Of a DNA stretch of 64,000 bases, positions 1,127 to 27,380 are shown in pieces. The notes under the pieces are model-generated. The model was not told the DNA's origin and searched no databases. It saw nothing but the letters and a program-made list of their open reading frames with translations. The first letter of the stretch is position 1. Every line of letters begins with the position of its first letter. The stretch lies in IMG/VR virus record IMGVR_UViG_3300032242_002454, positions 140,626-204,625 of that record; one strand, given 5' to 3'. The translations under genes were made by a program, and so were the position numbers.

Positions 1127-1199
1127 GGGGCGTTCGTCTAATGGTCTAAGACGCTAGTCTTATTAACTAGCTAAGGGAGTTCGATTCTCTCACGCCCTA
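1127..1199 (+). tRNA. tRNA-Ile(UAU), atypical U37
   Basis: Acceptor GGGGCGT/ACGCCCT, D stem GTCT/AGAC, anticodon stem CTAGT/ACTAG with loop CTTATTA, T arm GGGAG-TTCGATT-CTCTC, A73; no encoded CCA. Confidence 0.8.
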
Positions 1200-1239
1200 C
1201 TTTTGCTTTAAGTATTCGATTCTTGATTGAAAGCAAGTA

Positions 1240-4682: not shown

Positions 4683-4739
4683 TTATTGGTTCCAATTAAG
4701 AGCGGTGTATAAAAATGTCCCGCCTCAAAGGAGCCTACC

Positions 4740-5165: not shown

Positions 5166-5176
5166 AGAGCAGTGGC

Positions 5177-5205
5177 TTGACAAGACGATAGGACTAGTGT
5201 ACAAT
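5177..5205 (+). promoter_or_regulatory. sigma70-type promoter
   Basis: TTGACA-N17-TACAAT, CGAT in spacer. Confidence 0.85.
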
Positions 5206-5241
5206 CACAGCATACACTTTGGAAACAAACTTGGAGTTGAA

Positions 5242-5952
5242 ATGTCTGACCTAATCCAGCAAGATCGAATTGAAAAAAAGCCTGTTGTTATGAGTACCAG
5301 CAAGGCCGATGAATTTTTTAAGAATTTTCCCAAGGACAAGGTTGTTGCTTATAAAGATTATTGGGAAACTGTTCGTCCCAAGACTGATGAAGATATTTTT
5401 CGTCGCTATCTTTTTGCTTATTGCTCAGTTCACACCACTTGGCAAGGTAATGTCAAAGGATATAATGCTATTAAGAATTTTAGCGAATGGGTAGATAGCA
5501 AAGAAATTCTTTTGGAAAAACTTCATAAGAGTGGCGTCGGTCTACACAATAATCGCACCACTTATATCTGGGATTTTAGTACCAAGTTTTGGGCTAATCC
5601 TAAAGACTTTTATTTGACTACCAAGAAGTATCATGTTAAGAAACGAGACAGTATCCTTAATAAGATTAGTGGGATTGGTCTGGCTAAAATTAGCTTTGCT
5701 CTTGAAATGATCCATCCTAATGAGGCAAGAGTATTGTGCGGAGATATTCACCAATTGAGACTTTACGATGTCGAGGCTCTTAAGTATAATAAAAGTAAGT
5801 CTGGCTCAGAGATTTATAAAAAGATGGAGCGTCACTGGATGGTGAATTGTGGAAAGCTTAAAGTTCCATCGTATGTTGCCCGATCAATCTATTGGGATGA
5901 TCTGCAAAAGAAAGAAGATAGTCGTTACTGGAGTTATGTTCTGGAGAACTAA
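5242..5952 (+). CDS. HhH-family N-glycosylase/AP lyase (Ogg2-like)
   Basis: HhH ISGIGLAKISFAL and downstream DIHQLR. Confidence 0.7.
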   Translation: MSDLIQQDRIEKKPVVMSTSKADEFFKNFPKDKVVAYKDYWETVRPKTDEDIFRRYLFAYCSVHTTWQGNVKGYNAIKNFSEWVDSKEILLEKLHKSGVGLHNNRTTYIWDFSTKFWANPKDFYLTTKKYHVKKRDSILNKISGIGLAKISFALEMIHPNEARVLCGDIHQLRLYDVEALKYNKSKSGSEIYKKMERHWMVNCGKLKVPSYVARSIYWDDLQKKEDSRYWSYVLEN

Positions 5953-6080: not shown

Positions 6081-6327
6081 AACAATTTTCATTCCGTGTT
6101 CTTGTAAGAGTGAAATTTTAATGATCGAATATGATCATGAAATAGATATGGCTGATCTGGCAATATTTGAACATTATACAAATTATAGCAATAAGATGTC
6201 ATTATGGCAGAGACTACGATATTGTTTTCAGGTTTTGGTATATAAAAAACCCTATTCTGATCAGATGGTGCTAGACAAAAAACAATTAAAAGATTTGCAA
6301 AAATTCCTGAGTGGACTTAGCCTTTAA
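6049..6327 (+). CDS. hypothetical protein
   Basis: ORF in operon. Confidence 0.7.
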   Translation: MGSVTNLKENKTIFIPCSCKSEILMIEYDHEIDMADLAIFEHYTNYSNKMSLWQRLRYCFQVLVYKKPYSDQMVLDKKQLKDLQKFLSGLSL

Positions 6328-6372
6328 GGTGTATATTATAAGGTTTCCTAACTTATAACAGGGAGGCTAATT

Positions 6373-6588
6373 ATGGTCGTTAGAACAGCAGTAGAATTCA
6401 TGAATGATCAATTAGCTGATAGAGTGAAGGTCTTACAAAAAGCTTTAAACCAAGCAGAAAATATTATAACCACTCTAGAAAAAGAAAACAACAATCTAAA
6501 AGACGTTCTTAATAATCTAACGTCAGAAAATAAGGAAGATTATATGCTTAATAGCGAGGCTTTTAATGAGCCAGTGTTTACGGTCTAA
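6373..6588 (+). CDS. coiled-coil protein
   Basis: GGAGG RBS, heptads, GGTGTA at 6328. Confidence 0.7.
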   Translation: MVVRTAVEFMNDQLADRVKVLQKALNQAENIITTLEKENNNLKDVLNNLTSENKEDYMLNSEAFNEPVFTV

Positions 6589-6844
6589 AAATAAAAGAGT
6601 AATAACACAAATTGGTGAGAATGAATATTTGGTTGAAGGCGAAAGTGATTGGGCTAGATTTGGTTGTCAATCAGATATATCAATAATAACTTCCGCTAAT
6701 TTAGAAGGTGGCCCATTTTTATTAGTGGGCGATTCTTTTTTGGGTAAAGGTAAAATCTCAGCAATACAAAATATTGACAGTGGCAGAGATGGCTATATAA
6801 TAATCAAAGTTACCTTATTCTCTAAAAAGGAAAAACATGATTAA
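6566..6844 (+). CDS. hypothetical protein
   Basis: ORF in operon. Confidence 0.65.
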   Translation: MSQCLRSKNKRVITQIGENEYLVEGESDWARFGCQSDISIITSANLEGGPFLLVGDSFLGKGKISAIQNIDSGRDGYIIIKVTLFSKKEKHD

Positions 6845-6936
6845 TGAATTGATTCCTATGATCGGATTTAATCAAGCTATGTTAATAGCTGGATATAATG
6901 AATATCAAACTCAACAAATAATTAAAGGGTCTACTT

Positions 6937-7122
6937 ATGAGCCAACTTCACAAGAGTAATAAGAATAGAGTTTTATTTGGTGTTTGTGGAGGACTAGCAG
7001 AAAATCTAGGAGTAGATGCCGCCGTACTAAGAATAGGATTTGTTCTTGGAGCAATTTTTACTGGAAGTATTTTGTTTTGGGTTTACTTACTTTTTGCTTT
7101 AGTATTACCTACACAGGATTGA
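6937..7122 (+). CDS. pspC: PspC-domain membrane protein
   Basis: NRVLFGVCGGLAENLGVD...LR, TM, Y..ALVLP. Confidence 0.9.
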   Translation: MSQLHKSNKNRVLFGVCGGLAENLGVDAAVLRIGFVLGAIFTGSILFWVYLLFALVLPTQD

Positions 7123-7126
7123 TTCA

Positions 7127-7693
7127 ATGGACAGGATAGAAGGTGGTCAGAAAATTTTCTTTATCTCTGATCTTCACCTTGGACATAAAAATATCATAGG
7201 ATATTGTAATCGTCCATTCTCCACTGGAGAAGAAATGGATTCTCAAATTCTTTCTTCCATAAACGAAAAAGTCTCCCAAAACGATATTCTTTATGTTCTA
7301 GGAGATTTTTGCCATAAAGGTGGAGTTGCTCAATCTTATAGAGAAAGAATAGCTTGTGAAAATATTCATATGATTCTAGGTAATCATGATGAACCAACTA
7401 AATTTTCCACAGGATTTTCTAGTGTTGGCTATCAGAAAATGATTCTATATAAAAATCAAAAAATATTTATGTGTCACTATCCCATGCGAAGCTGGCCTAG
7501 TAGTCACAAAAAAAGCTGGATGCTTTATGGTCATGTTCATAGCAGATTCCATCGTGAGGACGTTGTTTCTGGTAGCCTCACGCTTGATGTAGGCGTGGAT
7601 AATAAAAGAGATGGGGTGACATTCGGTACTCCTTGGAGTTTTAAAGACGTTCAACAACAATTTCTGGCGAGAGCGAAAAATTTTTCAAGGTAG
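7127..7693 (+). CDS. calcineurin-like metallophosphoesterase
   Basis: DLH, GD, GNHD, CHYP, GHVH, DVGVD. Confidence 0.92.
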   Translation: MDRIEGGQKIFFISDLHLGHKNIIGYCNRPFSTGEEMDSQILSSINEKVSQNDILYVLGDFCHKGGVAQSYRERIACENIHMILGNHDEPTKFSTGFSSVGYQKMILYKNQKIFMCHYPMRSWPSSHKKSWMLYGHVHSRFHREDVVSGSLTLDVGVDNKRDGVTFGTPWSFKDVQQQFLARAKNFSR

Positions 7694-7697
7694 CCTG

Positions 7698-7726
7698 TTG
7701 ACAATGCCGATACCATACTGTACAAT
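7698..7726 (+). promoter_or_regulatory. sigma70-type promoter
   Basis: TTGACA-N17-TACAAT, GCCGAT in spacer. Confidence 0.85.
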
Positions 7727-7805
7727 CAAAGGAACAACGAGGGTAAGATCAGTCGCCTGACTGAGCCTGTCGTTGAAAGATTGGTTAAGAATTTGGAGGT
7801 TGATT

Positions 7806-8090
7806 ATGGCTGAAGTTACTACTACTGATAAGCAGACCCGTGTTCGTTGCAGTGATGATCAGTTTCTTGAGGCGGTTTTTAACAGCAGGACTTATGCTGA
7901 GATTGCTACTAAGACAGGTCAGAAGGTTGCTAGTACGATGGCTCGTTATGCTCGTACAAAGGCTGCTCTGGCTAAGAAGGGAATTGAACTTCCTGCTATG
8001 GAACGAGCAAAGCCTATTAAGACTATTGATAATGTCGAAGCTATGGCTGAGACAGTTCGCCGTCTAAAGGCTGCTCATTCTAACGGCTGA
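7806..8090 (+). CDS. small basic HTH-like DNA-binding protein
   Basis: GGAGG RBS; TYAEIATKTGQKVAST. Confidence 0.65.
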   Translation: MAEVTTTDKQTRVRCSDDQFLEAVFNSRTYAEIATKTGQKVASTMARYARTKAALAKKGIELPAMERAKPIKTIDNVEAMAETVRRLKAAHSNG

Positions 8091-8197: not shown

Positions 8198-8270
8198 GGC
8201 CCAGTAACCCAATGGCAGAGGTAGCGGACTTAAAATCCGTCAAGTATCAGTTCGAGTCTGATCTGGGCCA
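8198..8270 (+). tRNA. tRNA-Leu(UAA), short variable loop
   Basis: GGCCCAG/CTGGGCC-A; anticodon arm GCGGA-CTTAAAA-TCCGT; T arm ATCAG-TTCGAGT-CTGAT. Confidence 0.92.
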
Positions 8271-8304
8271 CTTTAATGTGGTGTAAAAAGTAGACAAAAT
8301 ATAT

Positions 8305-16047: not shown

Positions 16048-16941
16048 ATGGCTGTTCCGTTTATGTTTGTGGATGGTAATTTGACGCTGGTTCTTAATAA
16101 TCAGAGTTATCAGGTGTTGCCAGATCATATCAACTATAAGTTGATTCTGGAAAGACTTCCATCTGCTACGGCAGATGAACTACTGGAAGTTGTTGATGTT
16201 CAAAAGGCTGTTGCTACTTTTAGCGATGGTCTTGTGGAGATCAAGAATGGACAGGTTCTCTACGAGGGTGAGGAAGTTCATGGTAGTATCAGTAAGCGTA
16301 TTCTGGAGTTTATGAGTAAGGGATTGCCTTTTCAACCCCTTGTTAATTTCCTGAATAATCTCATGGAAAATCCAAGTATGCAGAGTCAAAAGGAGTTGTA
16401 TGACTTCTTGGAACATGAACATCTTCCCATTACTGAGGATGGTTTCTTCCTCGCTTATAAGGCTGTTCGTTCAGACTTTAAGGATAAGTATAGGGGAGTT
16501 TTTGACAATAGAGTTGGTAAGGTCTGTGAAATGCAAAGAGCAAAGGTTGATGATGATCGTGGTCGTGGTTGCTCTAATGGACTTCATGCTGGTGCATTGA
16601 ATTATGTTGCCAACTATGGAAGTCTTGAGTCTGGAGACAAGATTGTTATTGTCAAGATTAATCCCAAGGATGTTGTGAGCGTTCCTAGTGACTGCAATTA
16701 TGAAAAGCTTCGCACTTGTCGCTATGAAGTAGTTGGACAGTATGAGGGTGAATTGCTCAAGCCTCTCTACAAGGCCGATTTTAGTCAGGATGATTACGAG
16801 GACGATGAGGATGATTATCTGAATGACTATGATGAGAGCTATTGGGATCAGTTTGATGATGAAGATGAAGATGAGGACGATGATCTTGTTGGTGATGAAG
16901 ATGATTCAGATTTTGATAATGGACTCTACGGAACTCATTGA
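16048..16941 (+). CDS. rIIB: rIIB-like protein with acidic tail
   Basis: LYDFL..LPITEDG.FLAYKAV, CSNGLH, VKINPKDVVSVP, RTCRYEV. Confidence 0.92.
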   Translation: MAVPFMFVDGNLTLVLNNQSYQVLPDHINYKLILERLPSATADELLEVVDVQKAVATFSDGLVEIKNGQVLYEGEEVHGSISKRILEFMSKGLPFQPLVNFLNNLMENPSMQSQKELYDFLEHEHLPITEDGFFLAYKAVRSDFKDKYRGVFDNRVGKVCEMQRAKVDDDRGRGCSNGLHAGALNYVANYGSLESGDKIVIVKINPKDVVSVPSDCNYEKLRTCRYEVVGQYEGELLKPLYKADFSQDDYEDDEDDYLNDYDESYWDQFDDEDEDEDDDLVGDEDDSDFDNGLYGTH

Positions 16942-16954
16942 AATTAATTAGTTA

Positions 16955-17036
16955 AGGTGGTGTTTGGTAACTTGTAAGGTAGCACCTATATAGTTTCTGC
17001 TATCGTGCAATAACGGTTCGATTCCGTTACCATCTT
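16955..17036 (+). ncRNA. tRNA-like RNA with non-canonical anticodon arm
   Basis: AGGTGGT/ACCATCT stem, GTT-TGGT-AAC mini D arm, 12-bp arm with 13-nt loop, T arm AACGG-TTCGATT-CCGTT. Confidence 0.7.
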
Positions 17037-17114
17037 TTAGATATTGCTCTTGATAATGATGTTCATTATCCCAATATCAAAAATGTAGGTAGGAAGTTGG
17101 AAAAAGGAAAACAA

Positions 17115-18275
17115 ATGTTTAGTGATACTTTGGCTTTTAATCCATTCGATAAGACTCATAGTGCTATTGGAACAAGAGATCAAATTACTTTGAGGAATAA
17201 GTTTTTTGATTCTTTTGGTGGTCAGCAGATTTTCTGTTACAACGGTGATCCTCGTAAGAAGATCAGTAGTATGAATCATACGGATCATCTTACCACTGTT
17301 GCTATTGCTAATGATAGTCAAGGTGCTGATGCTTACTTCTATGTTAATGGTGGACGTAAACAATATGCTATTAGTAGAATTCGTGCTTGTTTTGTTGATA
17401 TGGATGCTGGGCGAGATGATCAGGGTAGCTATTTAAAGCCTAGCATTGTTATGCAAAAGAAGCGGGAGTTCTTAAATAAGATCAATAACTTTCCAGTAAA
17501 ACCAAGCTGGGTTGTTGATACTCGTAATGGCTATCAGTGCTATTGGATTCTAAACCAAAACAATATAAATCCTCACAAGACTTATTGGAATGGTATTCAA
17601 AAGAAACTTGTGAACCATTTTGGTGGTGATGCCAGAGCTATCAAAATCAATCAGATTTATAGAATCCCTTATACTTGGTGGAGGAAGGGTTGGGAAGGAA
17701 AGCAACCTTATTTTACCAGTATTTTGTCGGGATCGACTGGTGACTGGGTAAATATTGAACAACTTAAAGAAGCTCTTGATGGCGTTTCTGCTGTGGTCAA
17801 TGTTATTGCAAATAAGACTAGTGATGAATGGTTTAAGGAATATGCTAAGGCTTATAAGAGGTCTGATGTTACTGGAGTTCCAGTATCAGTCAATGTTGCT
17901 GCAACTATTGCTGATCAGATGAAGTCTCTTAACCTTAAGAACAGCACTGTATTCTGTAATACATATACCAATAGTACAGATGATATCAAGAATAAGTATG
18001 TATATTCTGGTCATGGTGTTTTCAATAAGGCTTATGGTGATCCTACTCCAGTATCTCCTGTGGTTGAGGACGATACAGATTCTCTTGAGACGCTTCCTGC
18101 TGACGCTGGGGGCGAGGATTTAGATCTTGACGGTTCCCAGACCAAGCTTTTAAAGACGGTTGTGGAGTTCCTTAATCAAGTCTCAACGCCGCTCTACTTT
18201 AGCAACAATAGATTCTTGTCTAACTCTGCTAAAGACCTTGCTTCTCAAATTAGTGACAAGTTTTGTATAGGGTGA
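17115..18275 (+). CDS. RepB'-type (AEP superfamily) primase-domain protein
   Basis: FVDMD, PSWVVDTRNGYQCYW, IYRIP. Confidence 0.75.
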   Translation: MFSDTLAFNPFDKTHSAIGTRDQITLRNKFFDSFGGQQIFCYNGDPRKKISSMNHTDHLTTVAIANDSQGADAYFYVNGGRKQYAISRIRACFVDMDAGRDDQGSYLKPSIVMQKKREFLNKINNFPVKPSWVVDTRNGYQCYWILNQNNINPHKTYWNGIQKKLVNHFGGDARAIKINQIYRIPYTWWRKGWEGKQPYFTSILSGSTGDWVNIEQLKEALDGVSAVVNVIANKTSDEWFKEYAKAYKRSDVTGVPVSVNVAATIADQMKSLNLKNSTVFCNTYTNSTDDIKNKYVYSGHGVFNKAYGDPTPVSPVVEDDTDSLETLPADAGGEDLDLDGSQTKLLKTVVEFLNQVSTPLYFSNNRFLSNSAKDLASQISDKFCIG

Positions 18276-18282
18276 GGGTTTT

Positions 18283-18696
18283 ATGGGACAACAAGATGAA
18301 GATTACAACTACGATGATGACTATGAAGATAGTCAGGATAATTTAGACAGTCAGCATAAAAATTATTTCAAGTTTGATCCTAGTGCATGGGATGCTTGGG
18401 GTAAAATGCTATACGAAGCTCTAAATGACATAGTTGAATATCCTTCTAATGTTTGGTATATTGGACATGGATTCGATAAAGGTTCGTTACCTGTGAATGA
18501 TTACTTCTCCAAATCAGGGAACTTTAAAAACTCCCTGTTTTTGGGGAACAATCATTATAAAGAACCAGTCTATAAAACCAAATACTTTATACATAACAAG
18601 TTAGATGTGGCGTATAGAAATCACTTAGTATCACACGCGGTTCATTTTCTTTCGCAACCAAACTATTATATGGGTATGTTCGACATACTTAATTAG
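18283..18696 (+). CDS. hypothetical protein
   Basis: GAGG RBS. Confidence 0.7.
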   Translation: MGQQDEDYNYDDDYEDSQDNLDSQHKNYFKFDPSAWDAWGKMLYEALNDIVEYPSNVWYIGHGFDKGSLPVNDYFSKSGNFKNSLFLGNNHYKEPVYKTKYFIHNKLDVAYRNHLVSHAVHFLSQPNYYMGMFDILN

Positions 18697-18705
18697 AGGA
18701 CAAGG

Positions 18706-18957
18706 ATGTTACCAGCAGCACTATTGTATGTGGCTATGTTCTTCAGTTCATTAACTGAAACTCCTTTTGTTGCATATGATCTAGCAACTCATATGAGCAA
18801 AGCACAAAGAGTAGAATGGACAAAAATGACAGATGATGATAATAATGTTAGGTTCACTATTACATTTTATAAGATGCCTATATTGGCAGAGCTAGGTTTT
18901 GAAAGAACTTTTGTGGATAAACACAATAACTGTCAAACGGAGCTTAATAAAAAATAA
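18706..18957 (+). CDS. hypothetical protein with signal-like N-terminus
   Basis: Hydrophobic N-term. Confidence 0.6.
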   Translation: MLPAALLYVAMFFSSLTETPFVAYDLATHMSKAQRVEWTKMTDDDNNVRFTITFYKMPILAELGFERTFVDKHNNCQTELNKK

Positions 18958-19193
18958 TGAACACATATTTTGAAATTTATTTTAATGAATCATCAGTCAG
19001 CAAAGTGTGCGACGCAATGGCTGAAGTTATAATCTTTATTGAAAATTGCACCAATCAAGATAGACGCATACCTGTCAAGATAGTAGAAAAAGATAAGAAA
19101 ACAGATAGGATCGTAGTGGTGTACAAACCCGTCCTGTCTGCTAAACTGGAATGGGTCAGCATCCCAAAGTACGAAGGGGAAACAATAGTATAA
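18957..19193 (+). CDS. hypothetical protein
   Basis: TAATG-coupled. Confidence 0.6.
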   Translation: MNTYFEIYFNESSVSKVCDAMAEVIIFIENCTNQDRRIPVKIVEKDKKTDRIVVVYKPVLSAKLEWVSIPKYEGETIV

Positions 19194-19627
19194 TGAAGAA
19201 CGAAAAATGGTTTTTTATAAGTAACTTTGAAGAATTTGTTGACCACTCAAGAGCTTTAGTTTTTAATTTATTTGGACAAGTTAATGAGATAGCCGCAGAT
19301 TCTTTAACTGCTTCTTTATCAACAATGAGTAAAGAAGAAATAGAAGAAATGGATACTACTCTTAGTCATGAAGAAGCGTCAGTTATAGTAAAGAATCATG
19401 CTAGAAAACAAATCAATAGAAATACTAAAGAAATTAGATATTCATTGACAGATAAAATTTTAGAAGAAATTATTGAAGATCTGAATGGAAGAATGGTTAG
19501 TAATATTTTGAATACCTTGGTTAACAAGGGAGTTTTGGATAGTGGATACGACAGTGAAAAAAACGATTTCATTTTTTGGGTGAAAGAAGATGCCAACAAT
19601 CAAAAAGAAACTCCTGAGACCGATTGA
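19193..19627 (+). CDS. hypothetical protein, paralog family A
   Basis: LNTLVNKGVLDSGYDSEKNDFIFW. Confidence 0.75.
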   Translation: MKNEKWFFISNFEEFVDHSRALVFNLFGQVNEIAADSLTASLSTMSKEEIEEMDTTLSHEEASVIVKNHARKQINRNTKEIRYSLTDKILEEIIEDLNGRMVSNILNTLVNKGVLDSGYDSEKNDFIFWVKEDANNQKETPETD

Positions 19628-20018
19628 TCAAGATATTCATTTCAAATATAGATGTTATGAATGTTCTTTAGATCATTGGTTATCAATTAGGGAAACTCAA
19701 ACAAAGGGTTTTAAAATAGTATGTGATTGTGGACAAATCCTAAAGGTAAAACTTATAGAAAAAATTGAGATAGTTTATCAGAAAGTTATCAAGAAAGAAA
19801 TTCCTCCTGAGCCAGATAAGCCAGAAGAATTACCAAAAAAATCAGAAACTATTCCAATAGATTTACTGTCACAATGTTGTACAATATTACTTGGTTATGG
19901 GTTTGATATTACTGAAGGTGAAGACTTAATAGTATCAACTTTTAATGAAAACCCTACTTATATTTGTGTAGATTTAATAAAACAAGCTTTGAAAAAATTT
20001 GGAGAAAAGAATGGCTAA
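19590..20018 (+). CDS. Zn-ribbon protein with RuvA C-terminal (domain III)-like domain
   Basis: CYEC...CDCG; Pro/Glu linker; ILLGYGF...DLIKQALKK; abuts ruvB. Confidence 0.65.
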   Translation: MPTIKKKLLRPIDQDIHFKYRCYECSLDHWLSIRETQTKGFKIVCDCGQILKVKLIEKIEIVYQKVIKKEIPPEPDKPEELPKKSETIPIDLLSQCCTILLGYGFDITEGEDLIVSTFNENPTYICVDLIKQALKKFGEKNG

Positions 20019-20928
20019 TGCAATCAGACCTACTCGTTTTAGTGAAATTATTGGACAATCAGAAGTTGTCACCAGACTCAACATCGTGGTTGCCGGTTGT
20101 AAAAACTCTGGTGGTGTGATGCCTCATCTTTTAATAGACGGCCCACCGGGGCTAGGAAAGACCACCATAGCGAGTGCTATAGCTACTGAGATGGGAGTGA
20201 ACCTATATACCATCAATGCGGCGACTATCCGTGGTATTAAAAATATTTTGCCATACATCATGGGTATGGAAAAAAAATCTGTTCTTTTTATTGATGAAAT
20301 TCATCGCCTGCCAAAAATTGTGGAAGAATTTCTCTATCCAGTAATGGAAGATTTTGTTCTTAATATTACTGTCAAAGATGAACAGGATAAAGAAAAGCCA
20401 GAAACCATTGAGTTGCCAATATTCACTTTAGTTGGAGCAACAACCAGCGGAGGATCTTTGAGTCAGCCATTTTATGATAGATTTCAAATCAAGGAACATT
20501 TGTCATTCTATAGTGAAAGTGATCTAGCTAAACTAGCAGGGTTAAATGCGCAAAAGCTCGGACTAATGATAAGCGATGATGATCTGGTTGAAATTGCCAA
20601 AAGAAGTAAAGGTACTCCAAGAATCTTAAATGGTAGGTTGCAATGGTATAAGAATTGTATAGCCTATTATACAGAGAAAAAAATGAGTGTGGATGAGATC
20701 TTTAATAGTCAGGGTATTGATAAGGACGGTTTGGATGTGTATGATAAGATGTATCTGAAGGTTCTTGCTAAGTCTAAGGGTGCTGGATTAGGTCTAAAGA
20801 GTATTTCTGCTTTAACTGGAATTGCTATGGATACTATTGAGAATAGCATTGAACCATATCTAGTACGAAAAGGTTTTGCCATAAGAACCCAAAAGGGACG
20901 AGTGATAGGCTCATATAAACATGAATGA
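20011..20928 (+). CDS. ruvB: Holliday junction branch migration ATPase RuvB
   Basis: RP..F..IGQ, GPPGLGKTT, FIDEIHR, LYPVMED, GATT, GTPR, EPYL, RTQKGR. Confidence 0.97.
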   Translation: MANAIRPTRFSEIIGQSEVVTRLNIVVAGCKNSGGVMPHLLIDGPPGLGKTTIASAIATEMGVNLYTINAATIRGIKNILPYIMGMEKKSVLFIDEIHRLPKIVEEFLYPVMEDFVLNITVKDEQDKEKPETIELPIFTLVGATTSGGSLSQPFYDRFQIKEHLSFYSESDLAKLAGLNAQKLGLMISDDDLVEIAKRSKGTPRILNGRLQWYKNCIAYYTEKKMSVDEIFNSQGIDKDGLDVYDKMYLKVLAKSKGAGLGLKSISALTGIAMDTIENSIEPYLVRKGFAIRTQKGRVIGSYKHE

Positions 20929-21253
20929 AATATCAGTATCAATAAACTTACCCACCATTATTTTCTTCTCAAGCACACTCCTAATCTTAGGGGTGTGTTT
21001 GTTTTTAATCGGCTATTTTGTTGGTAAGCAGTCTAGTGCTGGTGTATGTAATACTGTTGGTTATACAAAACCCACGAGCTTTTTTCAAGAACAGAAAAAG
21101 GATAAAACAGTTGTCTCTATTGATGACACTAAATATGTGGTTGATATTAAGACATCTGAAATGGAAAAAAAATATGAATCTTTGGGCGAAATAAAAGAAT
21201 CTGAAGAAGATATAATCAGTTCTATAAATAAACTTAAAAATATGAAAAGGTGA
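20921..21253 (+). CDS. single-TM membrane protein upstream of actin
   Basis: N-terminal TM, charged C-term helix. Confidence 0.7.
   Translation: MNEISVSINLPTIIFFSSTLLILGVCLFLIGYFVGKQSSAGVCNTVGYTKPTSFFQEQKKDKTVVSIDDTKYVVDIKTSEMEKKYESLGEIKESEEDIISSINKLKNMKR
20971..21006 (+). terminator. intrinsic terminator after ruvB (inside next ORF)
   Basis: AAGCACACTCCTA/TAGGGGTGTGTTT stem then GTTTTT. Confidence 0.7.
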
Positions 21254-21256
21254 AAT

Positions 21257-22258
21257 ATGGCAGCTGGATTAGACGTTGGCACAAGTTATATAGTGTTGTC
21301 AAAAGAAAACAAAAATAGTATCATCTATAAAGATTTTAGAGATGCTTTTTATGTTATCAAACCAACCACACCAGTCGCCACAAAGATGATAGAGAAAGGA
21401 TTAGCGGGGAAAGTTTTTATTAAAGATGCTGATGGATCATTTATTCTATTAGGTAAAGATGCTATTGAAAAAGCTATAGAAAGAAATGATACTGCAAAAA
21501 GACCAATGTATAAAGGCGTAGTATCTGCAAAAGAAAAAGATGCTAAGAAGATATTGGCTTTTATCTTGAAAGAAGTAGCTGGTAAGGCTAAGGAAGAAAA
21601 TGAAAAACTAGTATTCTGCGTTCCTGCTCAACCAGTAGATCAAGAAGATGAAGATTTCGATGTTGGATACCATGAAGATGTGGTAAAGACTATTCTAGCT
21701 GAATGTGGATATAGTGCCAAAGCTATTAATGAAGCAGAGGCGCTTTGTTATGCCGAACTGGAAGTTGAAGATTATACTGGTATCGCAGTTAGCTGTGGTG
21801 CTGGAATGACCAATGTTTGCGTGATGTTAAATGGTGAACCCACTGTAGTATTCAGTACAACTAAAAGCGGAGACTGGATTGATCGTATGAGTGCTGTTGC
21901 TACAGGAGAACCAGACAGTGTTGTACAGGCAGAGAAGGAGGCTGGTGGTTTTACTATAGGTGAACCAAATGATAATCCAGTTTTAGGTGCAGTGTCAGCA
22001 TATTATGAGAGACTAATAGACTATACTACAAAACAATTAGCTCATGCTTTATCAAATCATAAATCATTACCAAAATTTAAAAATCCTTTAGTTATTGTCG
22101 TAGCTGGTGGTACTTCTCAGGCTAATGGATATATCAAGGAGTTTGCTAAAAAACTAGAAGAAAATGGATTTCCATTACAAATTAAAGAAGTCAGACATGC
22201 GGCAGACCCCTTACATTCTGTCGCCAAAGGATGTTTGATTGCTGCAAAGGTATTATAA
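21257..22258 (+). CDS. actin-like ATPase (MreB/MamK/ParM superfamily)
   Basis: GLDVGTS, RPM..G, VP, INEAEA, SCGAGMTN, GD.ID, VAGGTS, A.G. Confidence 0.88.
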   Translation: MAAGLDVGTSYIVLSKENKNSIIYKDFRDAFYVIKPTTPVATKMIEKGLAGKVFIKDADGSFILLGKDAIEKAIERNDTAKRPMYKGVVSAKEKDAKKILAFILKEVAGKAKEENEKLVFCVPAQPVDQEDEDFDVGYHEDVVKTILAECGYSAKAINEAEALCYAELEVEDYTGIAVSCGAGMTNVCVMLNGEPTVVFSTTKSGDWIDRMSAVATGEPDSVVQAEKEAGGFTIGEPNDNPVLGAVSAYYERLIDYTTKQLAHALSNHKSLPKFKNPLVIVVAGGTSQANGYIKEFAKKLEENGFPLQIKEVRHAADPLHSVAKGCLIAAKVL

Positions 22259-22563
22259 TGTTTAATTTTCTGAATAAAATCAGGTTTGCAGTAAGATCTC
22301 CAAAATGGAGTACTGTAAGAAAACAACATCTAAAAGAAAATCCATTTTGTATAGCCTGTGGTAGAAATAAAAAATTAGAAGTTCACCATAAAACTCCAGT
22401 ACATATTAGTCCAGAACTTGAATTAGATCCTTCAAATCTTGTTACTTTATGTGCTGATCCGTGTCATATTTTGTTTGGTCATTTGATGAATTTTAAGAGT
22501 TATAATAAATCGGTCATAGAAGATTGTTCGGTGTATTTAAGTAAGGTAAAAAATAGACCCTAA
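22258..22563 (+). CDS. small HNH endonuclease
   Basis: CIACG..LEVHH...NLVTLC..CH...H. Confidence 0.88.
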   Translation: MFNFLNKIRFAVRSPKWSTVRKQHLKENPFCIACGRNKKLEVHHKTPVHISPELELDPSNLVTLCADPCHILFGHLMNFKSYNKSVIEDCSVYLSKVKNRP

Positions 22564-22591
22564 TTTTACATATCCGTCAAAGGAATGACCC

Positions 22592-23332
22592 ATGAAAAGC
22601 TTAATTTTTCTTCTGGGTATCTTTTTATTTTTTTCAAATTCTCTTGCTGGGACAATTGATCCCAATGTTGAAGATTCTAAGTATGTGGAGTATGGAAACA
22701 AATTTAAACATACTGTCAGGATAATTTGTTATGACGATAATGGACAGGCGGCAGGTTCTGCTGTGATAGTTGATAATAATTGGATAATAACAGCAGCTCA
22801 TGTTGTAAAAAATATGAAAGATCATCACATTATTGTTGATGGTAAACAATATAATTTAGATTTTATTGTGTGTCATGAAAAATATAGCGATAATGTTTTT
22901 GGATATTATGATATTGCAATAGGTCATATAGCTGAACAGGTGGATATGTCTCCTTATCCAGATCTTTATGAAGAAGAGGACGAAGTAGGAAAAGTGGCAG
23001 CTATTGCTGGTGTTGGGCTTACTGGAAATTTTAATACTGGAGTGACCATTTCTGATGGTAAAAAAAGAGCTGGTTCAAACTATATTAAAAAAATAGAAAG
23101 AGGAACACTAGTATGCGATGCTTCCAGGCCCAGTCAAAAAATAACAGAACTTGAGTATCTTATTTGTAGTGGAGATAGTGGTGGAGGTCTTTTTATAGAT
23201 GGAAAACTTGCTGGAATAAATTCTTCTGTATTGGGGTATGATGGTAAGCCAGACTCAACGTATGGAGATGAAAGTTGTCATACAAGAATTAGTATGTATA
23301 TTCCATGGATTAGAAACATTATTAAGAAATAA
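22592..23332 (+). CDS. secreted trypsin-like (S1) serine protease
   Basis: Signal peptide, TAAH, DIA, GDSGG. Confidence 0.93.
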   Translation: MKSLIFLLGIFLFFSNSLAGTIDPNVEDSKYVEYGNKFKHTVRIICYDDNGQAAGSAVIVDNNWIITAAHVVKNMKDHHIIVDGKQYNLDFIVCHEKYSDNVFGYYDIAIGHIAEQVDMSPYPDLYEEEDEVGKVAAIAGVGLTGNFNTGVTISDGKKRAGSNYIKKIERGTLVCDASRPSQKITELEYLICSGDSGGGLFIDGKLAGINSSVLGYDGKPDSTYGDESCHTRISMYIPWIRNIIKK

Positions 23333-23334
23333 TT

Positions 23335-24264
23335 ATGTTAAAAAAGAAACAATGCAAGCTTTTACCGCACACAAGAAAAGATATTTATGGTTTATCGGTA
23401 GGATCTAGTCAGTTCCATAGCTGGCCCATTGATAAATTCTCAGTTCCTCAACAATGGAGACATTCTCAAGGAGAAGGTGTAACTGTAGCAGTAATAGATA
23501 CTGGATGCGATTTAAATCACGAAGATATTAAAGACAATATTGTAGATGGTTATAATTTCATAAATCCAGATCAACCCCCACAAGATGATAATGGTCACGG
23601 AACTCACGTTGCTGGTACAATAGCTGCCGTGAACAATGGTGTAGGCATGGTAGGAGTCGCTCCACAAGCCAAGATCATGCCTATTAAAGCACTTGGAGCC
23701 GATGGGTCAGGAATTAATAAAAACGTCGCTGAAGCGATTGTGTGGGCTGCTGACCACGGAGCAGATTTGATAACTATGTCTCTAGGTTCAGAATATCCAT
23801 CCATTCAGATAGAAAAAGCTATAGAGTATGCTAAATATAAAAATGTAATTATATTTTGTGCGGCAGGCAATAGTGGAATAGAGTCTGGCATCCAATATCC
23901 TGCTAAGTATAATAATACTATTAGTGTTGGAGCAATAGATGAAAAATTAAATATTTGTACATTTAGTTGTTGTGGAGAAGAGCTTGACTTTTTAGCTCCG
24001 GGAGCAGATATTATTAGTGCTGTACCTGGAAATGCTTATGCTTCTATGTCTGGAACAAGCATGGCAACACCATTTGCCGTAGGTTGTGCTGCGTTGTTTC
24101 TATCTTTTGCCAAAAAAATTAAGTTCGCTATGCTAGAGAATATGCTTAAATCATCAGACGACTATGTGTCTGTTTTTGCTAAAAAAGCCATGAAGCTACA
24201 TCAGCAAAATTATACAGGAATAAAGAAATATGAAGGCTATGGTATCATTAGACCCATACTCTAA
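23335..24264 (+). CDS. subtilisin-like (S8) protease
   Basis: IDTG, HGTHVAG, AAGN, GTSMATP. Confidence 0.96.
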   Translation: MLKKKQCKLLPHTRKDIYGLSVGSSQFHSWPIDKFSVPQQWRHSQGEGVTVAVIDTGCDLNHEDIKDNIVDGYNFINPDQPPQDDNGHGTHVAGTIAAVNNGVGMVGVAPQAKIMPIKALGADGSGINKNVAEAIVWAADHGADLITMSLGSEYPSIQIEKAIEYAKYKNVIIFCAAGNSGIESGIQYPAKYNNTISVGAIDEKLNICTFSCCGEELDFLAPGADIISAVPGNAYASMSGTSMATPFAVGCAALFLSFAKKIKFAMLENMLKSSDDYVSVFAKKAMKLHQQNYTGIKKYEGYGIIRPIL

Positions 24265-26285: not shown

Positions 26286-26492
26286 ATGCCAAAATATTAT
26301 GTGCAAACTGGACAAATGAAATATGTTGTTGATAAGCCAAACTCTGATGAGGCAATAATATGTACGTTGAAACACTTTAAAGGTAAAGGACTAGTTACTC
26401 ACTCAAAAATATGCATTAGTGAATTTGGGTGGGGAAAAAGATTAAAGTGTTATGATACCGATGAATTTTTGAAAGAAATCAATAATGAATAA
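26286..26492 (+). CDS. hypothetical protein
   Basis: ORF in operon. Confidence 0.65.
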   Translation: MPKYYVQTGQMKYVVDKPNSDEAIICTLKHFKGKGLVTHSKICISEFGWGKRLKCYDTDEFLKEINNE

Positions 26493-26949
26493 ACATACTA
26501 TTAGACCAGATGATCCAGAAAAACTAAACTACTTACCTCCTACTAAAATTATAGTCGGAGATTCGCTTGTTCATGGTAGGGGAGTTTTCGCTACCAGCAA
26601 AATCTATAAAGGAGAAATAATTGAACGATGTCCTTTGATAGAAATGGAATATAGATCTAAATACCAATTAGATCCTATTATTTTTGGTTATATGTATGCA
26701 CAACCACCATGTAATTGTGAAGATTGTGAAAAACATGGATTCGTTTTCCACATGGTTCTTGGTTATGGTATGATATATAATCATCAAGACCAACCTAATG
26801 CCTTGTGGAAATTTAATTATTCTCAATTACTATCAGATGTTATTGCTACAAAAGATATTAATAAAGATGATGAAATTTTTGTAAGTTATGGTAATTGTTA
26901 TTTTGATTCAGAAGGTATAGAGACAGGAAAAACTAAGGTTATCAAATGA
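26485..26949 (+). CDS. SET-domain lysine methyltransferase 1
   Basis: GRGVFA, YNHQDQPNA, DEIFVSYG. Confidence 0.9.
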   Translation: MNKHTIRPDDPEKLNYLPPTKIIVGDSLVHGRGVFATSKIYKGEIIERCPLIEMEYRSKYQLDPIIFGYMYAQPPCNCEDCEKHGFVFHMVLGYGMIYNHQDQPNALWKFNYSQLLSDVIATKDINKDDEIFVSYGNCYFDSEGIETGKTKVIK

Positions 26950-27380
26950 GTATAGATTTTTTACAAGATTTTCCTATTAAAGTAGGACTATCTGCCATAG
27001 AGGGTAGAGGTATCTTTTCTACTAAAGAAATTAAAGAAGGAGATCTTATAGAAAGATGCCCTATGGTTCCTTTGGCTTTTAGATCTAGATATCATTCAGA
27101 TCCTCAAATATATAAGTATTTGTATTCTCAACCAACTTGTCCATGTAATGAATGCAAGGTTCATGGTTTTAAATTTTATATGGTATTAGGATATGGAATG
27201 CTTTATAATCATCAAGATGATCCTAACACAGAATGGCAATTTGATTTTCCTAATCTAGTAGCAGACATTATGGCTATAAAAAATATTCCAGCAGGAAATG
27301 AAATTTTTGTAGATTATGGCACCAAATATTTTAATGATCAACCAAAAATAGAAAATAAAGATAATGCAAAAAATAATTAA
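26946..27380 (+). CDS. SET-domain lysine methyltransferase 2
   Basis: GRGIFS, YNHQDDPN, GNEIFVDYG. Confidence 0.9.
   Translation: MSIDFLQDFPIKVGLSAIEGRGIFSTKEIKEGDLIERCPMVPLAFRSRYHSDPQIYKYLYSQPTCPCNECKVHGFKFYMVLGYGMLYNHQDDPNTEWQFDFPNLVADIMAIKNIPAGNEIFVDYGTKYFNDQPKIENKDNAKNN

What the first reader, a model, noticed from the sequence alone, without database searches (positions are those of the whole stretch)
20921..22258. Phage actin-like ATPase with an adjacent membrane protein
Seen: all actin-fold motifs are present, with an unusual phosphate-2 (SCGAG, Asp replaced by Ser), 3 nt downstream of a single-TM gene. Known: jumbo phages use PhuZ tubulin for spindles, and phage actins (e.g. AlpC) are rarely characterised. 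Inference: an actin-based, possibly membrane-tethered positioning or trafficking system.
Basis: partly seen in the sequence, partly recalled or inferred. Interest (0 to 1): 0.7.

Follow-up and report, generated by a model that had tools for sequence, protein, structure and literature searches.

The report
Phage volactin actin with membrane adaptor
A freshwater jumbo phage encodes a prokaryotic actin of the known "volactin" family, immediately preceded by a small membrane protein whose conserved tail probably hooks the actin to the cell membrane. Neither the phage version nor this adaptor appears to have been studied.

Summary
ORFs 20921-21253 (110 aa, one N-terminal TM helix) and 21257-22258 (333 aa) are real and lie 3 nt apart. 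The 333-aa protein is a full-length member of Pfam PF25216 Volactin (216 bits, cut-off 35), with a confident actin fold nearest MamK, MreB and BeeR. The Ser in phosphate-2 is a family-wide trait, not a peculiarity. The window is the end of a complete 204.6-kb freshwater jumbo phage that has no tubulin.

The gene pair is conserved in all 80 close viral relatives examined and at 53% actin identity. The partner's TM and linker drift, but its C-terminal ~50 aa, ending in a helix ...S[IV]NKLKNMK[GR], is nearly invariant. A tail pattern (hydrophobic-x-K/R-L-K/R-x-hydrophobic) also ends the gene upstream of volactin in distant phages and, in a blind test, in 12 of 24 planctomycete loci against 2 of 256 background ORFs. 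Co-folding places this helix in the actin IA/IIA cleft, with weak support only (0.51; best control 0.12).

Best reading: a two-gene filament-plus-adaptor system that works like ParM-ParR, but with the adaptor anchored in the membrane rather than on DNA. Polymerisation, binding and biological role are untested. It is a new variant of a known kind.

The parts
19999..20928 (+). RuvB-like AAA+ ATPase gene. Its end overlaps the partner gene's start by 8 nt. It is the first gene of the conserved module.
   Evidence: Pfam RuvB_N 158.8 bits, RuvB_C and AAA_lid_4. A ~300-aa RuvB-like ORF precedes the partner in most close relatives and in L122 at 53% actin identity.
20921..21253 (+). Partner (adaptor) gene, 110 aa: short N-terminus, one TM helix, variable linker, conserved cytoplasmic C-terminal block.
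   Evidence: ORF. No Pfam, PHROG or PADLOC family. An equivalent ORF ends 1-10 nt before the actin gene in nearly all of 80 relatives. 58 database relatives, all from this phage clade.
20948..21022 (+). TM segment of the partner (residues ~10-34). Its sequence varies between relatives, but a hydrophobic segment is always present.
   Evidence: KD19 maximum 2.58, and 1.8-3.3 in relatives. AF2 helix 10-42, pLDDT 91-96. K/R follow the segment. The signal-peptide-trypsin-TM-tail fusions in L044 and L068 imply N-out/C-in topology.
21101..21250 (+). Conserved cytoplasmic C-terminal block of the partner (residues 61-110): SIDxxKxVxDIKT...EKKY..LG...I..S[IV]NKLKNMK[GR].
   Evidence: Invariant I67, I98, K104, L105, K106; at least 90% conserved V73, I76, T78, K83, K84, Y85, G89, K109. 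Mean identity to the window is 62%, against 45% for the TM and linker part.
21212..21247 (+). Tail helix (residues 98-109, IISSINKLKNMK), the proposed actin-binding element.
   Evidence: AF2 helix 98-109, pLDDT ~80. Residues 91-109 form the predicted interface. The tail pattern recurs in upstream partners of distant volactins.
21257..22258 (+). Volactin-family actin gene, 333 aa.
   Evidence: Pfam PF25216, 216 bits, residues 1-330 against profile 1-321/321. AF2 pLDDT 97.1, pTM 0.93. Foldseek top hits MamK 5ljv, MreB, BeeR 8r2n at TM ~0.7.
21266..21292 (+). Phosphate-1 motif (residues 4-12, GLDVGTSYI).
   Evidence: D6 and G8 invariant, T9 at least 90% conserved in 60 relatives.
21779..21814 (+). 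Phosphate-2 motif (residues 175-186, GIAVSCGAGMTN) with the family-typical Ser179 in place of Asp.
   Evidence: G181 and G183 invariant; S179, G175 and N186 at least 90% conserved. Relatives read SFGAGM, SCGAGM, SWGAGM, SCGGGM, SMGSGM. Aligns to D-I-G-G-G-T of BeeR.
21866..21883 (+). SGDWID motif (residues 204-209). An intein is inserted just before it in some relatives.
   Evidence: D206 and D209 invariant, G205 at least 90% conserved. P0121 has Intein_splicing and LAGLIDADG_3 domains between FSTTK and CGDW.
22097..22123 (+). Adenosine-binding motif (residues 281-289, VVAGGTSQA).
   Evidence: G284 and G285 invariant, T286 at least 90% conserved.
22231..22563 (+). Small HNH-domain gene overlapping the actin gene's 3' end by 28 nt. 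It is a conserved member of the module.
   Evidence: Pfam HNH 28.9 bits and PHROG HNH endonuclease. Same position in L122 and L016; it moves together with the trypsin gene in L044 and L068.
22592..23332 (+). Secreted trypsin-like serine protease gene (signal peptide, GDSGG). In some relatives it is fused N-terminally to the partner's TM and tail.
   Evidence: Pfam Trypsin 64.9 bits. Fusion ORFs of 370-382 aa in L044, L046, L064, L068 and L070, with the Trypsin domain confirmed in L044.
23335..24264 (+). Subtilase (S8) gene, the last conserved member of the module.
   Evidence: Pfam Peptidase_S8 197.6 bits. Syntenic in L122, L016, L007 and L044.

Best explanation
This is a two-gene cytoskeletal cassette. 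The 333-aa protein is a volactin-family actin, expected to bind ATP and form dynamic filaments in the infected cell. The 110-aa protein is its adaptor: a bitopic inner-membrane protein (N-terminus out, C-terminus in) whose cytoplasmic end is a short amphipathic, basic helix (...IISSINKLKNMKR).

The helix is proposed to insert into the hydrophobic cleft between actin subdomains IA and IIA. In a filament that cleft is free only at one end. The adaptor would therefore cap or nucleate filament tips and tie them to the membrane, giving filaments that run from membrane to membrane through the cytoplasm.

Mechanistically this is ParM-ParR logic (actin plus an adaptor with a C-terminal cleft-binding helix), with the membrane taking the place of a DNA centromere. 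In one sub-clade the membrane-spanning adaptor also carries a periplasmic trypsin-like protease.

What is shown:
- family membership and fold
- conservation of the pair
- conservation of the tail across phage and bacterial volactin loci
- partner topology, from natural fusions

What is inferred:
- polymerisation
- tail-cleft binding
- tip anchoring
- the biological role, which I take to be reorganising or scaffolding the infected cell (shape or size, or placing replication and assembly or envelope proteases) rather than DNA segregation
For: (1) Membership. Pfam Volactin over the full length, 216 bits against a cut-off of 35. AF2 pLDDT 97. Actin fold nearest MamK, MreB and BeeR. All nucleotide-binding motifs are invariant.

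(2) Conservation. The actin is 82-98% identical across 80 viral loci and 409 viral relatives, so it is under strong purifying selection.

(3) The pair. The partner ORF abuts the actin gene in nearly all relatives and at 53% actin identity within a syntenic module. RuvB overlaps the partner by 8 nt, and the partner-actin gap is 3 nt with an SD sequence, which suggests co-translation.

(4) Gradient in the partner. Mean identity is 86% for the actin, 62% for the partner's C-terminal 50 aa and 45% for its TM and linker. I98, K104, L105 and K106 are invariant.

(5) The tail elsewhere. The pattern hydrophobic-x-[KR]-L-[KR]-x-hydrophobic occurs in the last 30 aa of the abutting upstream ORF in 6 of 10 distant loci against 0 of 157 other ORFs (p 8e-9). 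In a blind test it occurs in 12 of 24 planctomycete loci against 2 of 256 background ORFs (p 6e-13), with further near-misses.

(6) Co-folding. ipSAE 0.51 (runs 0.50-0.54) against a best control of 0.12. The tool's verdict is 'weak support': its mark was reached by 51 of 78 solved complexes and 2 of 108 mismatched pairs, but passes at 0.60 or under included only 5 of the 78 solved complexes and all 4 mismatches that passed of 180. Partner residues 91-109 contact actin residues 17-24, 165-173, 192-193 and 324-333. By the model's topology these are the connect-1 helix, the IIA hairpin and the connect-2 helix, which together make the classical actin target-binding cleft.

(7) Tail structure. The tail is a helix in the AF2 model (residues 98-109).

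(8) Topology. Natural fusions of signal peptide, trypsin domain, TM and tail, plus K/R after the TM segment.

(9) Literature.
- A CdpA-like 4-TM protein, HVO_2016, lies next to volA (PMC12126565).
Against: - The co-fold score falls in the range the tool itself calls weak, where a pass is more often wrong than right without a prior. The partner's pLDDT in the complex is ~50.
- The predicted contact residues on the actin are not more conserved than the protein average: entropy 2.63 against 2.18, and 9834 of 10000 random residue sets are at least as conserved. Only Y165, A166, G193 and L327 are conserved.
- Planctomycete partners that carry the tail have no TM segment, so membrane anchoring is not a family-wide property.
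- Two loci lack a clear tail-bearing partner: L126 has ClpP upstream, and the L003 tail does not fit the pattern.
- No expression data: no RNA run was listed.
- Polymerisation of a phage volactin has never been shown, and no cargo or role can be read from the sequence.
Confidence: 0.5

Rival explanations
1. A DNA-positioning system of the ParMRC or AlpAC type. The filaments would move or anchor phage genomes or replication complexes, and the partner would link DNA, directly or through another protein such as the adjacent RuvB-like ATPase, to the filament and the membrane.
For: - The pair sits in a DNA-metabolism region: primase-polymerase-like and RuvB-like genes upstream, ligase and rIIA nearby. 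The RuvB gene overlaps the partner gene.
- Other family members are fused to DNA-binding domains: ParB-HTH in P0143 and P0168, and HU/Bac_DNA_binding in an Acidobacteriota cluster.
- The prophage actin AlpC acts in viral DNA replication and transport (PMC4446434). Salactin aids DNA partitioning (cited in PMC10869688).
Against: - The partner has no detectable DNA-binding domain. It is a TM helix, a disordered linker and a short helix.
- There is no centromere-like repeat array within 16.5-23.5 kb of the window.
- The RuvB linkage is lost in more distant phage loci that keep the partner-actin pair.
- The actin is not of the ParM family.
Confidence: 0.15
2. A static, non-filament actin-fold ATPase acting as the cytoplasmic partner of a bitopic membrane protein, in the manner of PilM-PilN or FtsA-FtsN. 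It would regulate or position the neighbouring exported proteases, for envelope remodelling, lysis timing or exclusion, rather than build a cytoskeleton.
For: - Actin-fold proteins that bind the short cytoplasmic tail of a bitopic membrane protein are among the structural matches (PilM:PilN 5eou, FtsA:FtsN 7q6i).
- A secreted trypsin-like protease and a subtilase are conserved neighbours.
- The protease is physically fused to the adaptor's TM and tail in two sub-clades.
Against: - The best structural matches are the filament formers MamK, MreB and BeeR, at TM ~0.7. PilM and FtsA match worse (TM 0.52-0.58, rmsd ~10 A).
- The only characterised family member forms dynamic filaments (PMC10869688).
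- The tail motif is shared with soluble planctomycete partners that have no protease context.
Confidence: 0.15
3. The two genes are inherited together as part of one operon but their products do not interact. On this view the basic, amphipathic tail has another role, for example binding lipid or nucleic acid.
For: - Co-folding support is only weak.
- The predicted actin contact surface is not especially conserved.
- Lys-rich amphipathic C-termini can bind membranes or nucleic acids non-specifically (general knowledge).
Against: - The tail pattern tracks volactin genes across phages and planctomycetes whose other gene context differs completely, and it is essentially absent from other ORFs.
- Homing-endonuclease insertions (L007) and the trypsin fusion leave the tail-bearing gene in place directly upstream of the actin gene.
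Confidence: 0.1

Closest known systems
Volactin (VolA, HVO_2015) of Haloferax volcanii; Pfam PF25216
   Same: Same Pfam family over the full length, and the same family-specific phosphate-2 with Ser. VolA forms dynamic filaments attached to the membrane by their tips (PMC10869688), and a multi-TM CdpA-like gene lies beside it (PMC12126565). Both observations parallel the membrane partner found here.
   Different: This copy is encoded by a tailed jumbo phage of freshwater bacteria rather than an archaeon. The partner here has one TM helix and 110 aa, not four TM segments. No phage volactin has been characterised. I could not test whether HVO_2016 carries the tail.
ParMRC type II plasmid partition (ParM actin, ParR adaptor, parC)
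   Same: The proposed mechanism is the same: a dynamic actin plus a small adaptor encoded next to it, whose C-terminal helix binds the IA/IIA cleft at the filament end (ParM-ParR from established knowledge; here).
   Different: The actin is not of the ParM family. The adaptor has a TM helix instead of a ribbon-helix-helix DNA-binding domain. There is no centromere repeat array, and the adaptor gene lies upstream of the actin gene.
AlpC/AlpA of Corynebacterium prophage CGP3
   Same: A phage-encoded actin-like protein working with an adaptor (PMC4446434, PMC5539076).
   Different: AlpA binds DNA (alpS sites) and AlpC serves viral DNA replication and transport. Here the adaptor is a membrane protein with no DNA-binding domain, and the actin belongs to the Volactin family. 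No AlpC sequence was compared directly.
MreB-RodZ and MamK (with its membrane-associated partners)
   Same: These are the nearest solved folds (MamK 5ljv, MreB; TM ~0.7). In the MreB-RodZ system a bitopic membrane protein couples a cytoplasmic actin to periplasmic enzymes, much as the trypsin-TM-tail fusions suggest here.
   Different: Sequence identity is only 14-20%. The MreB_Mbl HMM gives a partial 31-bit match against 216 bits for Volactin. RodZ binds through an N-terminal HTH domain with the opposite topology. No peptidoglycan-synthesis genes are in the neighbourhood.
FcmB/FcmC (CorM/CorR) of filamentous cyanobacteria
   Same: An actin whose adjacent partner localises it to the membrane and which acts in cell shape rather than DNA segregation (PMC12645912).
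   Different: FcmB derives from ParM and is not of the Volactin family. It is chromosomal and bacterial, not phage-encoded.
PhuZ tubulin spindle of nucleus-forming jumbo phages
   Same: A jumbo-phage-encoded cytoskeletal polymer that organises the infected cell (PMC7950403).
   Different: It has a different fold (tubulin). This phage has no tubulin homolog, and no evidence for a phage nucleus was sought or found.

Membership tests
Volactin (Pfam PF25216) | Full-length match to the family profile above the curated cut-off, scoring better than any other actin-like family | tested here: met
   216.1 bits against a cut-off of 35, residues 1-330 on profile 1-321/321. MreB_Mbl gives only 31 bits over residues 60-210, and Salactin gives no hit. 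Confirmed on the genome. ESM Atlas clusters named 'Volactin domain-containing protein' are 93-100% viral.
Volactin (Pfam PF25216) | Actin fold with intact nucleotide-binding motifs, including the family's S-x-G-[AGS]-G-M phosphate-2 | tested here: met
   AF2 pLDDT 97.1. Foldseek top hits MamK, MreB and BeeR. D6, G8, E159, G181, G183, D206, D209, G284, G285 and G325 are invariant, and S179 is at least 90% conserved.
Volactin (Pfam PF25216) | Forms dynamic filaments in vivo (the property by which VolA was defined) | not testable with these tools
   Known only for H. volcanii VolA (PMC10869688). It would need expression and imaging, or in-vitro polymerisation.
ParMRC type II partition | ParM-family actin | tested here: not met
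   No ParM-type Pfam hit. The nearest structures are MamK, MreB and BeeR, not ParM.
ParMRC type II partition | DNA-binding adaptor (ParR, ribbon-helix-helix) and a centromere repeat array next to the genes | tested here: not met
   The partner has no Pfam, PHROG or PADLOC domain. Its model is a TM helix, a disordered linker and a C-terminal helix. No repeat array lies in window 16500-23500.
ParMRC type II partition | Adaptor C-terminal helix binds the actin IA/IIA cleft | tested here: inconclusive
   Co-fold ipSAE 0.51 against a best control of 0.12, judged 'weak support'. The interface is partner 91-109 with actin 165-173, 192-193 and 324-333. The contact residues are not enriched for conservation.
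MreB/Mbl | Full-length match to the MreB_Mbl profile, plus a RodZ-type partner | tested here: not met
   The match is partial and weak (31 bits, residues 60-210 only), with 14-20% identity to MreB structures. The partner lacks an HTH domain.
MamK | MamK-type sequence family and magnetosome gene context | tested here: not met
   MamK is the top structural hit, but at 19% identity and TM 0.72. Atlas MamK clusters carry the MreB_Mbl and Actin Pfam families, not Volactin. There are no magnetosome genes, and the genome is a phage.
PhuZ-type phage tubulin system | Tubulin/FtsZ-fold GTPase encoded by the phage | tested here: not met
   No PF00091 match in the complete 204.6-kb genome, while the controls ring in 13 of 14 genomes.
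AlpAC (CGP3 prophage) | AlpC-family actin with the DNA-binding adaptor AlpA and alpS sites | not tested
Indirectly, the partner has no DNA-binding domain and no repeats were found.

The most novel reading that the evidence does not exclude
The C-terminal tail (hydrophobic-x-K/R-L-K/R-x-hydrophobic, in an amphipathic basic helix) would be the universal, previously unrecognised volactin-binding peptide. It would be the 'unknown volactin-binding factor' of haloarchaea, and a ParR/WH2-like cleft binder shared by phage, planctomycete and possibly archaeal systems. The interchangeable N-terminal modules would decide what the filament tips are attached to: a TM helix, an amphipathic helix, a coiled coil, or a periplasmic protease across the membrane. 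In this abundant freshwater jumbo-phage clade the cassette would form a virus-built, membrane-to-membrane actin cytoskeleton. In some members it would mechanically or spatially couple a periplasmic protease to cytoplasmic filaments.
Probability: 0.35. Interest if true: 0.8.

Novelty: new variant of a known kind. Interest (0 to 1): 0.62.

Why it matters
Phage cytoskeletons are known mainly from PhuZ tubulin and a single studied prophage actin (AlpC). Here a highly conserved actin of a different family, paired with a dedicated membrane adaptor, turns up in a very abundant clade of freshwater jumbo phages: 409 viral relatives and 1843 database proteins.

The same analysis yields a concrete, testable candidate for the so far unknown volactin-binding partners. 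It is a short tail motif found next to volactin genes in phages and in about half of the planctomycete loci examined. That gives experimenters working on Haloferax, Planctomycetota or phage systems a peptide and three residues (K-L-K) to mutate. It would extend the 'actin plus cleft-binding adaptor' principle of ParMRC to a membrane-anchored, virus-encoded system. The function during infection remains open.

Tried and rejected
- **Phosphate-2 as a peculiarity or an intein site: rejected.** The Ser is family-wide and the Cys position is variable. The intein in relatives sits about 24 residues downstream, before SGDW.
- **Profile-based locus search.** The search for related loci with the diverse alignment A1 failed because no stretch was conserved enough. 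Scans with single distant representatives mostly re-found the window's own clade. I switched to exact-protein look-ups.
- **Sequence search with the partner's tail region.** It found only the phage's own clade (58 hits). The wider tail conservation had to be shown with a fixed pattern and background counts instead.
- **Genome-collection scan with P0145.** It returned only its own planctomycete MAG, but that gave a handle for the phylum-wide search.
- **Haloarchaeal loci.** None was reachable: none of the 150 representatives looked haloarchaeal. The tail could not be checked in HVO_2016.
- **Conservation of the predicted actin interface.** No enrichment was found. This is reported as evidence against.
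- **Centromere-like repeats and promoter or terminator signals.** There are no repeats, and promoter-like sites are at chance level (32 found, 31.9 expected).
- **Expression evidence.** No RNA run was listed, and read laying was therefore not used.
- **PADLOC.** Only generic AAA and protease hits, with no defence-system assignment.
- **Second automated pass over the planctomycete loci.** My script picked short spurious ORFs in these high-GC loci for many of them. Only the six loci with long, tail-bearing partners were used for the 'no TM' statement.
Full report
**1. What is in the sequence**

- The first is 20921-21253 (+), 110 aa.
- The second is 21257-22258 (+), 333 aa.
- They are separated by 3 nt, and an AAGGTGA Shine-Dalgarno-like sequence overlaps the first gene's stop.
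- The upstream RuvB-like AAA+ gene (19999-20928; Pfam RuvB_N, RuvB_C) overlaps the first ORF by 8 nt.
- All genes in the region are on the + strand and closely packed. The pair therefore lies inside one transcription unit, with probable translational coupling.

The 110-aa protein has one strongly hydrophobic segment (residues ~10-34, KD19 maximum 2.58). Lys or Arg follow that segment, and the rest of the protein is highly charged.

**2. What genome this is**

- The window is the last 64 kb of a complete 204,625-bp viral record with direct terminal repeats. I measured a 123-bp exact terminal repeat.
- It encodes a large terminase, a PolIII-alpha-type polymerase split into two ORFs, primase, exonuclease, rIIA, DNA ligase, and giant structural-looking ORFs of 5022, 4023 and 2674 aa.
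- The nearest terminases of cultured phages are only ~24% identical.
- The phage and close relatives occur in freshwater and lake metagenomes from many studies.
- It is therefore an uncultured freshwater jumbo phage.
- It has no tubulin/PhuZ homolog.

**3. Identity of the 333-aa protein**

- Pfam assigns it over the full length to PF25216 Volactin: 216 bits against a cut-off of 35, residues 1-330 on profile 1-321/321. MreB_Mbl gives only a partial 31-bit match.
- It has no PHROG family.
- AlphaFold with a 60-sequence alignment gives pLDDT 97.1 and pTM 0.93.
- The closest solved structures are MamK (5ljv), MreB and BeeR (8r2n), at TM ~0.7 and 14-20% identity. No solved structure is close by sequence.
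- Columns invariant across 60 diverse relatives are D6 and G8 (phosphate-1), E159 (connect-1), G181 and G183 (phosphate-2), D206 and D209, G284 and G285 (adenosine) and G325.
The adjacent Cys position is free.
- Ser at phosphate-2 is therefore a family signature, not a sign of inactivation or novelty in this copy.

**4. The family**

- An exhaustive search finds 943 clusters at 50% identity.
- Volactin genes are present above the Pfam cut-off in 114 of 301 sampled Planctomycetota genomes.
- ESM Atlas holds clusters named 'Volactin domain-containing protein' that are 93-100% viral.
- In GenBank phage records only two uncultured huge phages carry a homolog, at 33-35% identity.
- BFVD has no close viral structure.
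- In a tree, the window's clade lies in a supported group (99/94) of phage and phage-context sequences, separate from the planctomycete clade (98/96). The two huge-phage copies fall elsewhere. Phage volactins thus belong to at least three lineages. No haloarchaeal sequence was in the tree.
- Family members show telling fusions:
  - ParB-HTH (P0143, P0168)
  - Wzz/GNVR/ParA-like (P0170)
  - tandem double actins (P0126)
  - HU (an Atlas cluster)
  - an intein with a LAGLIDADG domain inserted before SGDW in viral copies

**5. The gene pair is conserved, and the tail is the conserved part**

In 80 viral loci with actins 82-98% identical, an ORF of 94-124 aa ends 1-10 nt before the actin gene in nearly all. 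These ORFs always have an N-terminal hydrophobic segment, but its sequence and the linker vary. The last ~50 aa are nearly constant: SIDxxKxVxDIKT..EKKY..LG...I..S[IV]NKLKNMK[GR].

Mean identity to the window:

| Region | Mean identity |
|---|---|
| Actin | 86% |
| Partner, C-terminal 50 aa | 62% |
| Partner, TM and linker | 45% |

I67, I98, K104, L105 and K106 are invariant.

The exceptions are instructive.
- In L007 a GIY-YIG/NUMOD3 homing endonuclease gene has been inserted between an intact partner gene and the actin gene.
- In L044, L046 and L064, and in L068 and L070, the partner is the C-terminal part of a 370-382-aa protein made of a signal peptide, a trypsin domain, the TM segment and the tail.
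- In the window the trypsin-like gene is separate, at 22592-23332.
- The fusion fixes the topology as protease outside, tail inside. It also ties the neighbouring exported protease functionally to the adaptor.
- At 53% actin identity (L122) the whole module is still syntenic: rIIB ... RuvB - TM partner - volactin - HNH - trypsin - S8.

**6. The tail extends beyond this clade**

In more distant loci the gene abutting the actin gene differs at its N-terminus but ends alike.

| Locus | N-terminal part of partner | C-terminal end |
|---|---|---|
| L122 | TM | DINKLKELKKR |
| L124 | basic amphipathic N-terminus, no TM | ADKLKKMLKRRKEQ |
| L125 | basic amphipathic N-terminus, no TM | AIDKLRQLKKAKG.. 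|
| L127 | no TM | AKRLRDILNKRKD |
| L129 (planctomycete MAG) | long coiled-coil-like | VERLKQIKQQ.. |
| L130 | long coiled-coil-like | LDRLKSLRGPKK.. |
| L002 (huge phage) | no TM | near-miss MGALKAVRKK |

I fixed the pattern [ILVMA]-x-[KR]-L-[KR]-x-[ILVM] within the last 30 residues and counted matches.
- In the phage's own genome it occurs in 2 of 350 ORFs, and one of those is the partner.
- In ten distant loci it occurs in 6 of 167 ORFs, and all six are the abutting upstream gene (Fisher p 8e-9).
- I then fetched 30 fresh planctomycete loci and applied the same pattern blind. It matched 12 of 24 upstream ORFs against 2 of 256 background ORFs (p 6e-13).
- There were near-misses (LGKLKGF, LAKYKSL, LRRMKSL) and two cases where the upstream gene is a second volactin.
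- The pattern was derived after seeing the first distant loci, so the first count is partly circular. The planctomycete test is independent.
- The tail-bearing planctomycete partners are ~280-450 aa with no TM segment.

The constant is therefore the tail, and the anchor module is exchangeable. The N-termini of the L124 and L125 partners have hydrophobic moments above the 95th percentile of background (0.68 and 0.81 against 0.67). The L127 N-terminus does not (0.55). This hints at peripheral membrane binding and is no more than suggestive.

**7. How the tail may act**

- AlphaFold models the partner as a TM helix (10-42), a disordered linker and a C-terminal helix (98-109, pLDDT ~80).
- The helix has a hydrophobic face (I98, I101, L105, M108) and a basic face.
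- Co-folding the actin with partner residues 60-110 scored ipSAE 0.51 (runs 0.50-0.54) against a best control of 0.12.
  - The tool rates this 'weak support'. The pass mark was reached by 51 of 78 solved complexes and 2 of 108 mismatched pairs.
  - Scores at 0.60 or under included only 5 of those solved complexes, and all 4 mismatches that passed of 180.
- The confident contacts are partner 91-109 with actin 17, 20-24, 165-166, 169, 172-173, 192-193, 324, 327-328 and 331-333.
- On the model's topology these are the end of the connect-1 helix, the IIA hairpin and the C-terminal connect-2 helix.
- From established knowledge of the actin fold, these line the hydrophobic target-binding cleft between subdomains IA and IIA. 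ParR's C-terminal helix binds ParM there, and WH2-type helices bind actin there. In a filament the cleft is free only at one end.
- This fits the published behaviour of H. volcanii volactin. [quoted passage not shown] A CdpA-like 4-TM gene lies next to volA (PMC12126565).
- Against over-reading the model: the contact residues as a set are less conserved than the protein average. Only Y165, A166, G193 and L327 are conserved.

**8. Function**

I commit to a filament-plus-adaptor system in which the adaptor ties filament ends to the inner membrane. The most likely use is to scaffold or reshape the infected cell, or to place membrane-linked activities. These include, in some relatives, a periplasmic protease carried by the adaptor itself.

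A DNA-positioning role of the ParMRC or AlpAC kind is the main rival.
- For it: the replication and recombination neighbourhood, and the DNA-binding fusions elsewhere in the family.
- Against it: the partner has no DNA-binding domain, there is no centromere-like array, and the RuvB linkage is not kept in distant loci.

A static PilM/FtsA-like scaffold is a second rival, and non-interaction a third.

None of polymerisation, ATPase activity, binding, timing of expression (no RNA run listed) or host is known.

**9. Comparison and novelty**

- Membership of the Volactin family is met on every sequence and structure criterion that could be tested. The family's defining behaviour, dynamic filaments, cannot be tested here.
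- It is not a ParM, MreB, MamK or tubulin system by the tests listed.
- It resembles ParMRC in proposed mechanism, MreB-RodZ in coupling across the membrane, and FcmB/FcmC (PMC12645912) in having a membrane-localising partner.
- Full-text searches found no paper on phage volactins or on a volactin adaptor. The nearest are the remarks on unknown binding factors and on the adjacent HVO_2016.
- Databases already label viral proteins as 'Volactin domain-containing', so the actin itself is a new member of a known family.
- The conserved adaptor with its tail, and its membrane-anchored phage form, make this a new variant of the actin-plus-adaptor kind.

Noticed in passing
window 20970-21001 (inside the partner gene): A strong RNA hairpin lies inside the partner gene: 14-bp stem, 4-nt loop, then UUUGUUUUU; -20.6 kcal/mol, z -6.3. 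The stem is conserved in the window's sub-clade while the loop varies. L016 and L023 carry a different, stronger hairpin at the same relative position, with one compensatory C:G to U:A change. Other sub-clades have none. Its role is unknown; it could be an attenuator or a translation pause at the TM segment.
   Followed up: partly
P0121 and other ~700-aa relatives; the equivalent site in the window is residues 203/204 (nt ~21863-21868): Some viral volactin genes carry an intein with a LAGLIDADG homing-endonuclease domain, inserted between FSTTK and (S->C)GDW. An ESM Atlas cluster of 57 such viral proteins exists. The window's copy is intein-free.
   Followed up: yes
L007:916-1521, L039:739-1347: A GIY-YIG/NUMOD3 homing-endonuclease gene is inserted exactly between the partner gene and the actin gene in a few relatives.
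   Followed up: yes
L044:3884-4996, L068:1285-2433 (and L046, L064, L070): These are natural fusions of signal peptide, trypsin-like protease, TM segment and conserved tail, directly upstream of the actin gene. In these loci the HNH and trypsin genes have moved from downstream to upstream of the actin.
   Followed up: yes
P0143, P0168, P0170, P0126/P0141; L129, L130: Cellular volactins occur as ParB-HTH fusions, as a Wzz/GNVR/ParA-like (BY-kinase-type) fusion, as tandem double-actin proteins, and as two adjacent paralogous genes. An Atlas cluster fuses HU (Bac_DNA_binding) to volactin.
   Followed up: partly
Planctomycetota genomes: Volactin-family genes score above the Pfam cut-off in 114 of 301 sampled planctomycete genomes, often with higher scores (~300 bits) than the phage copy. 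The published 'saltatorellin' (PVC group), 'Bbp' (giant bacteria) and BeeR are other actins placed between MamK and MreB. Their relation to PF25216 was not tested.
   Followed up: no
window 26485-26949 and 26946-27380: Two adjacent paralogous SET-domain genes (Pfam SET, ~49 bits each) in a phage genome.
   Followed up: partly
G000 3437-5311 and 6201-7832 (outside the window): The PolIII-alpha-type DNA polymerase (phrog_405) is split into two ORFs, matching profile positions 52-614 and 614-1070, with ~0.9 kb between them. The intervening element was not examined.
   Followed up: no
G000 17642-75090, minus strand (outside the window): A run of giant ORFs (5022, 4023, 2674, 1868 and 1443 aa), presumably virion or fibre proteins. 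The likely capsid and portal ORFs near 89-94 kb have no PHROG match.
   Followed up: no
window 19999-20928 and 23335-24264: The RuvB-like ATPase gives weak PADLOC hits to IetA, and the subtilase hits 'subtilase' and IetS models. These are probably generic AAA and S8 similarity, but an ATPase-plus-subtilase pairing flanks the actin pair.
   Followed up: no
window 1127-1200 and 8198-8271: Two tRNA genes, Ile(TAT) and Leu(TAA), which match A/T-ending codons in this 33% GC genome.
   Followed up: no
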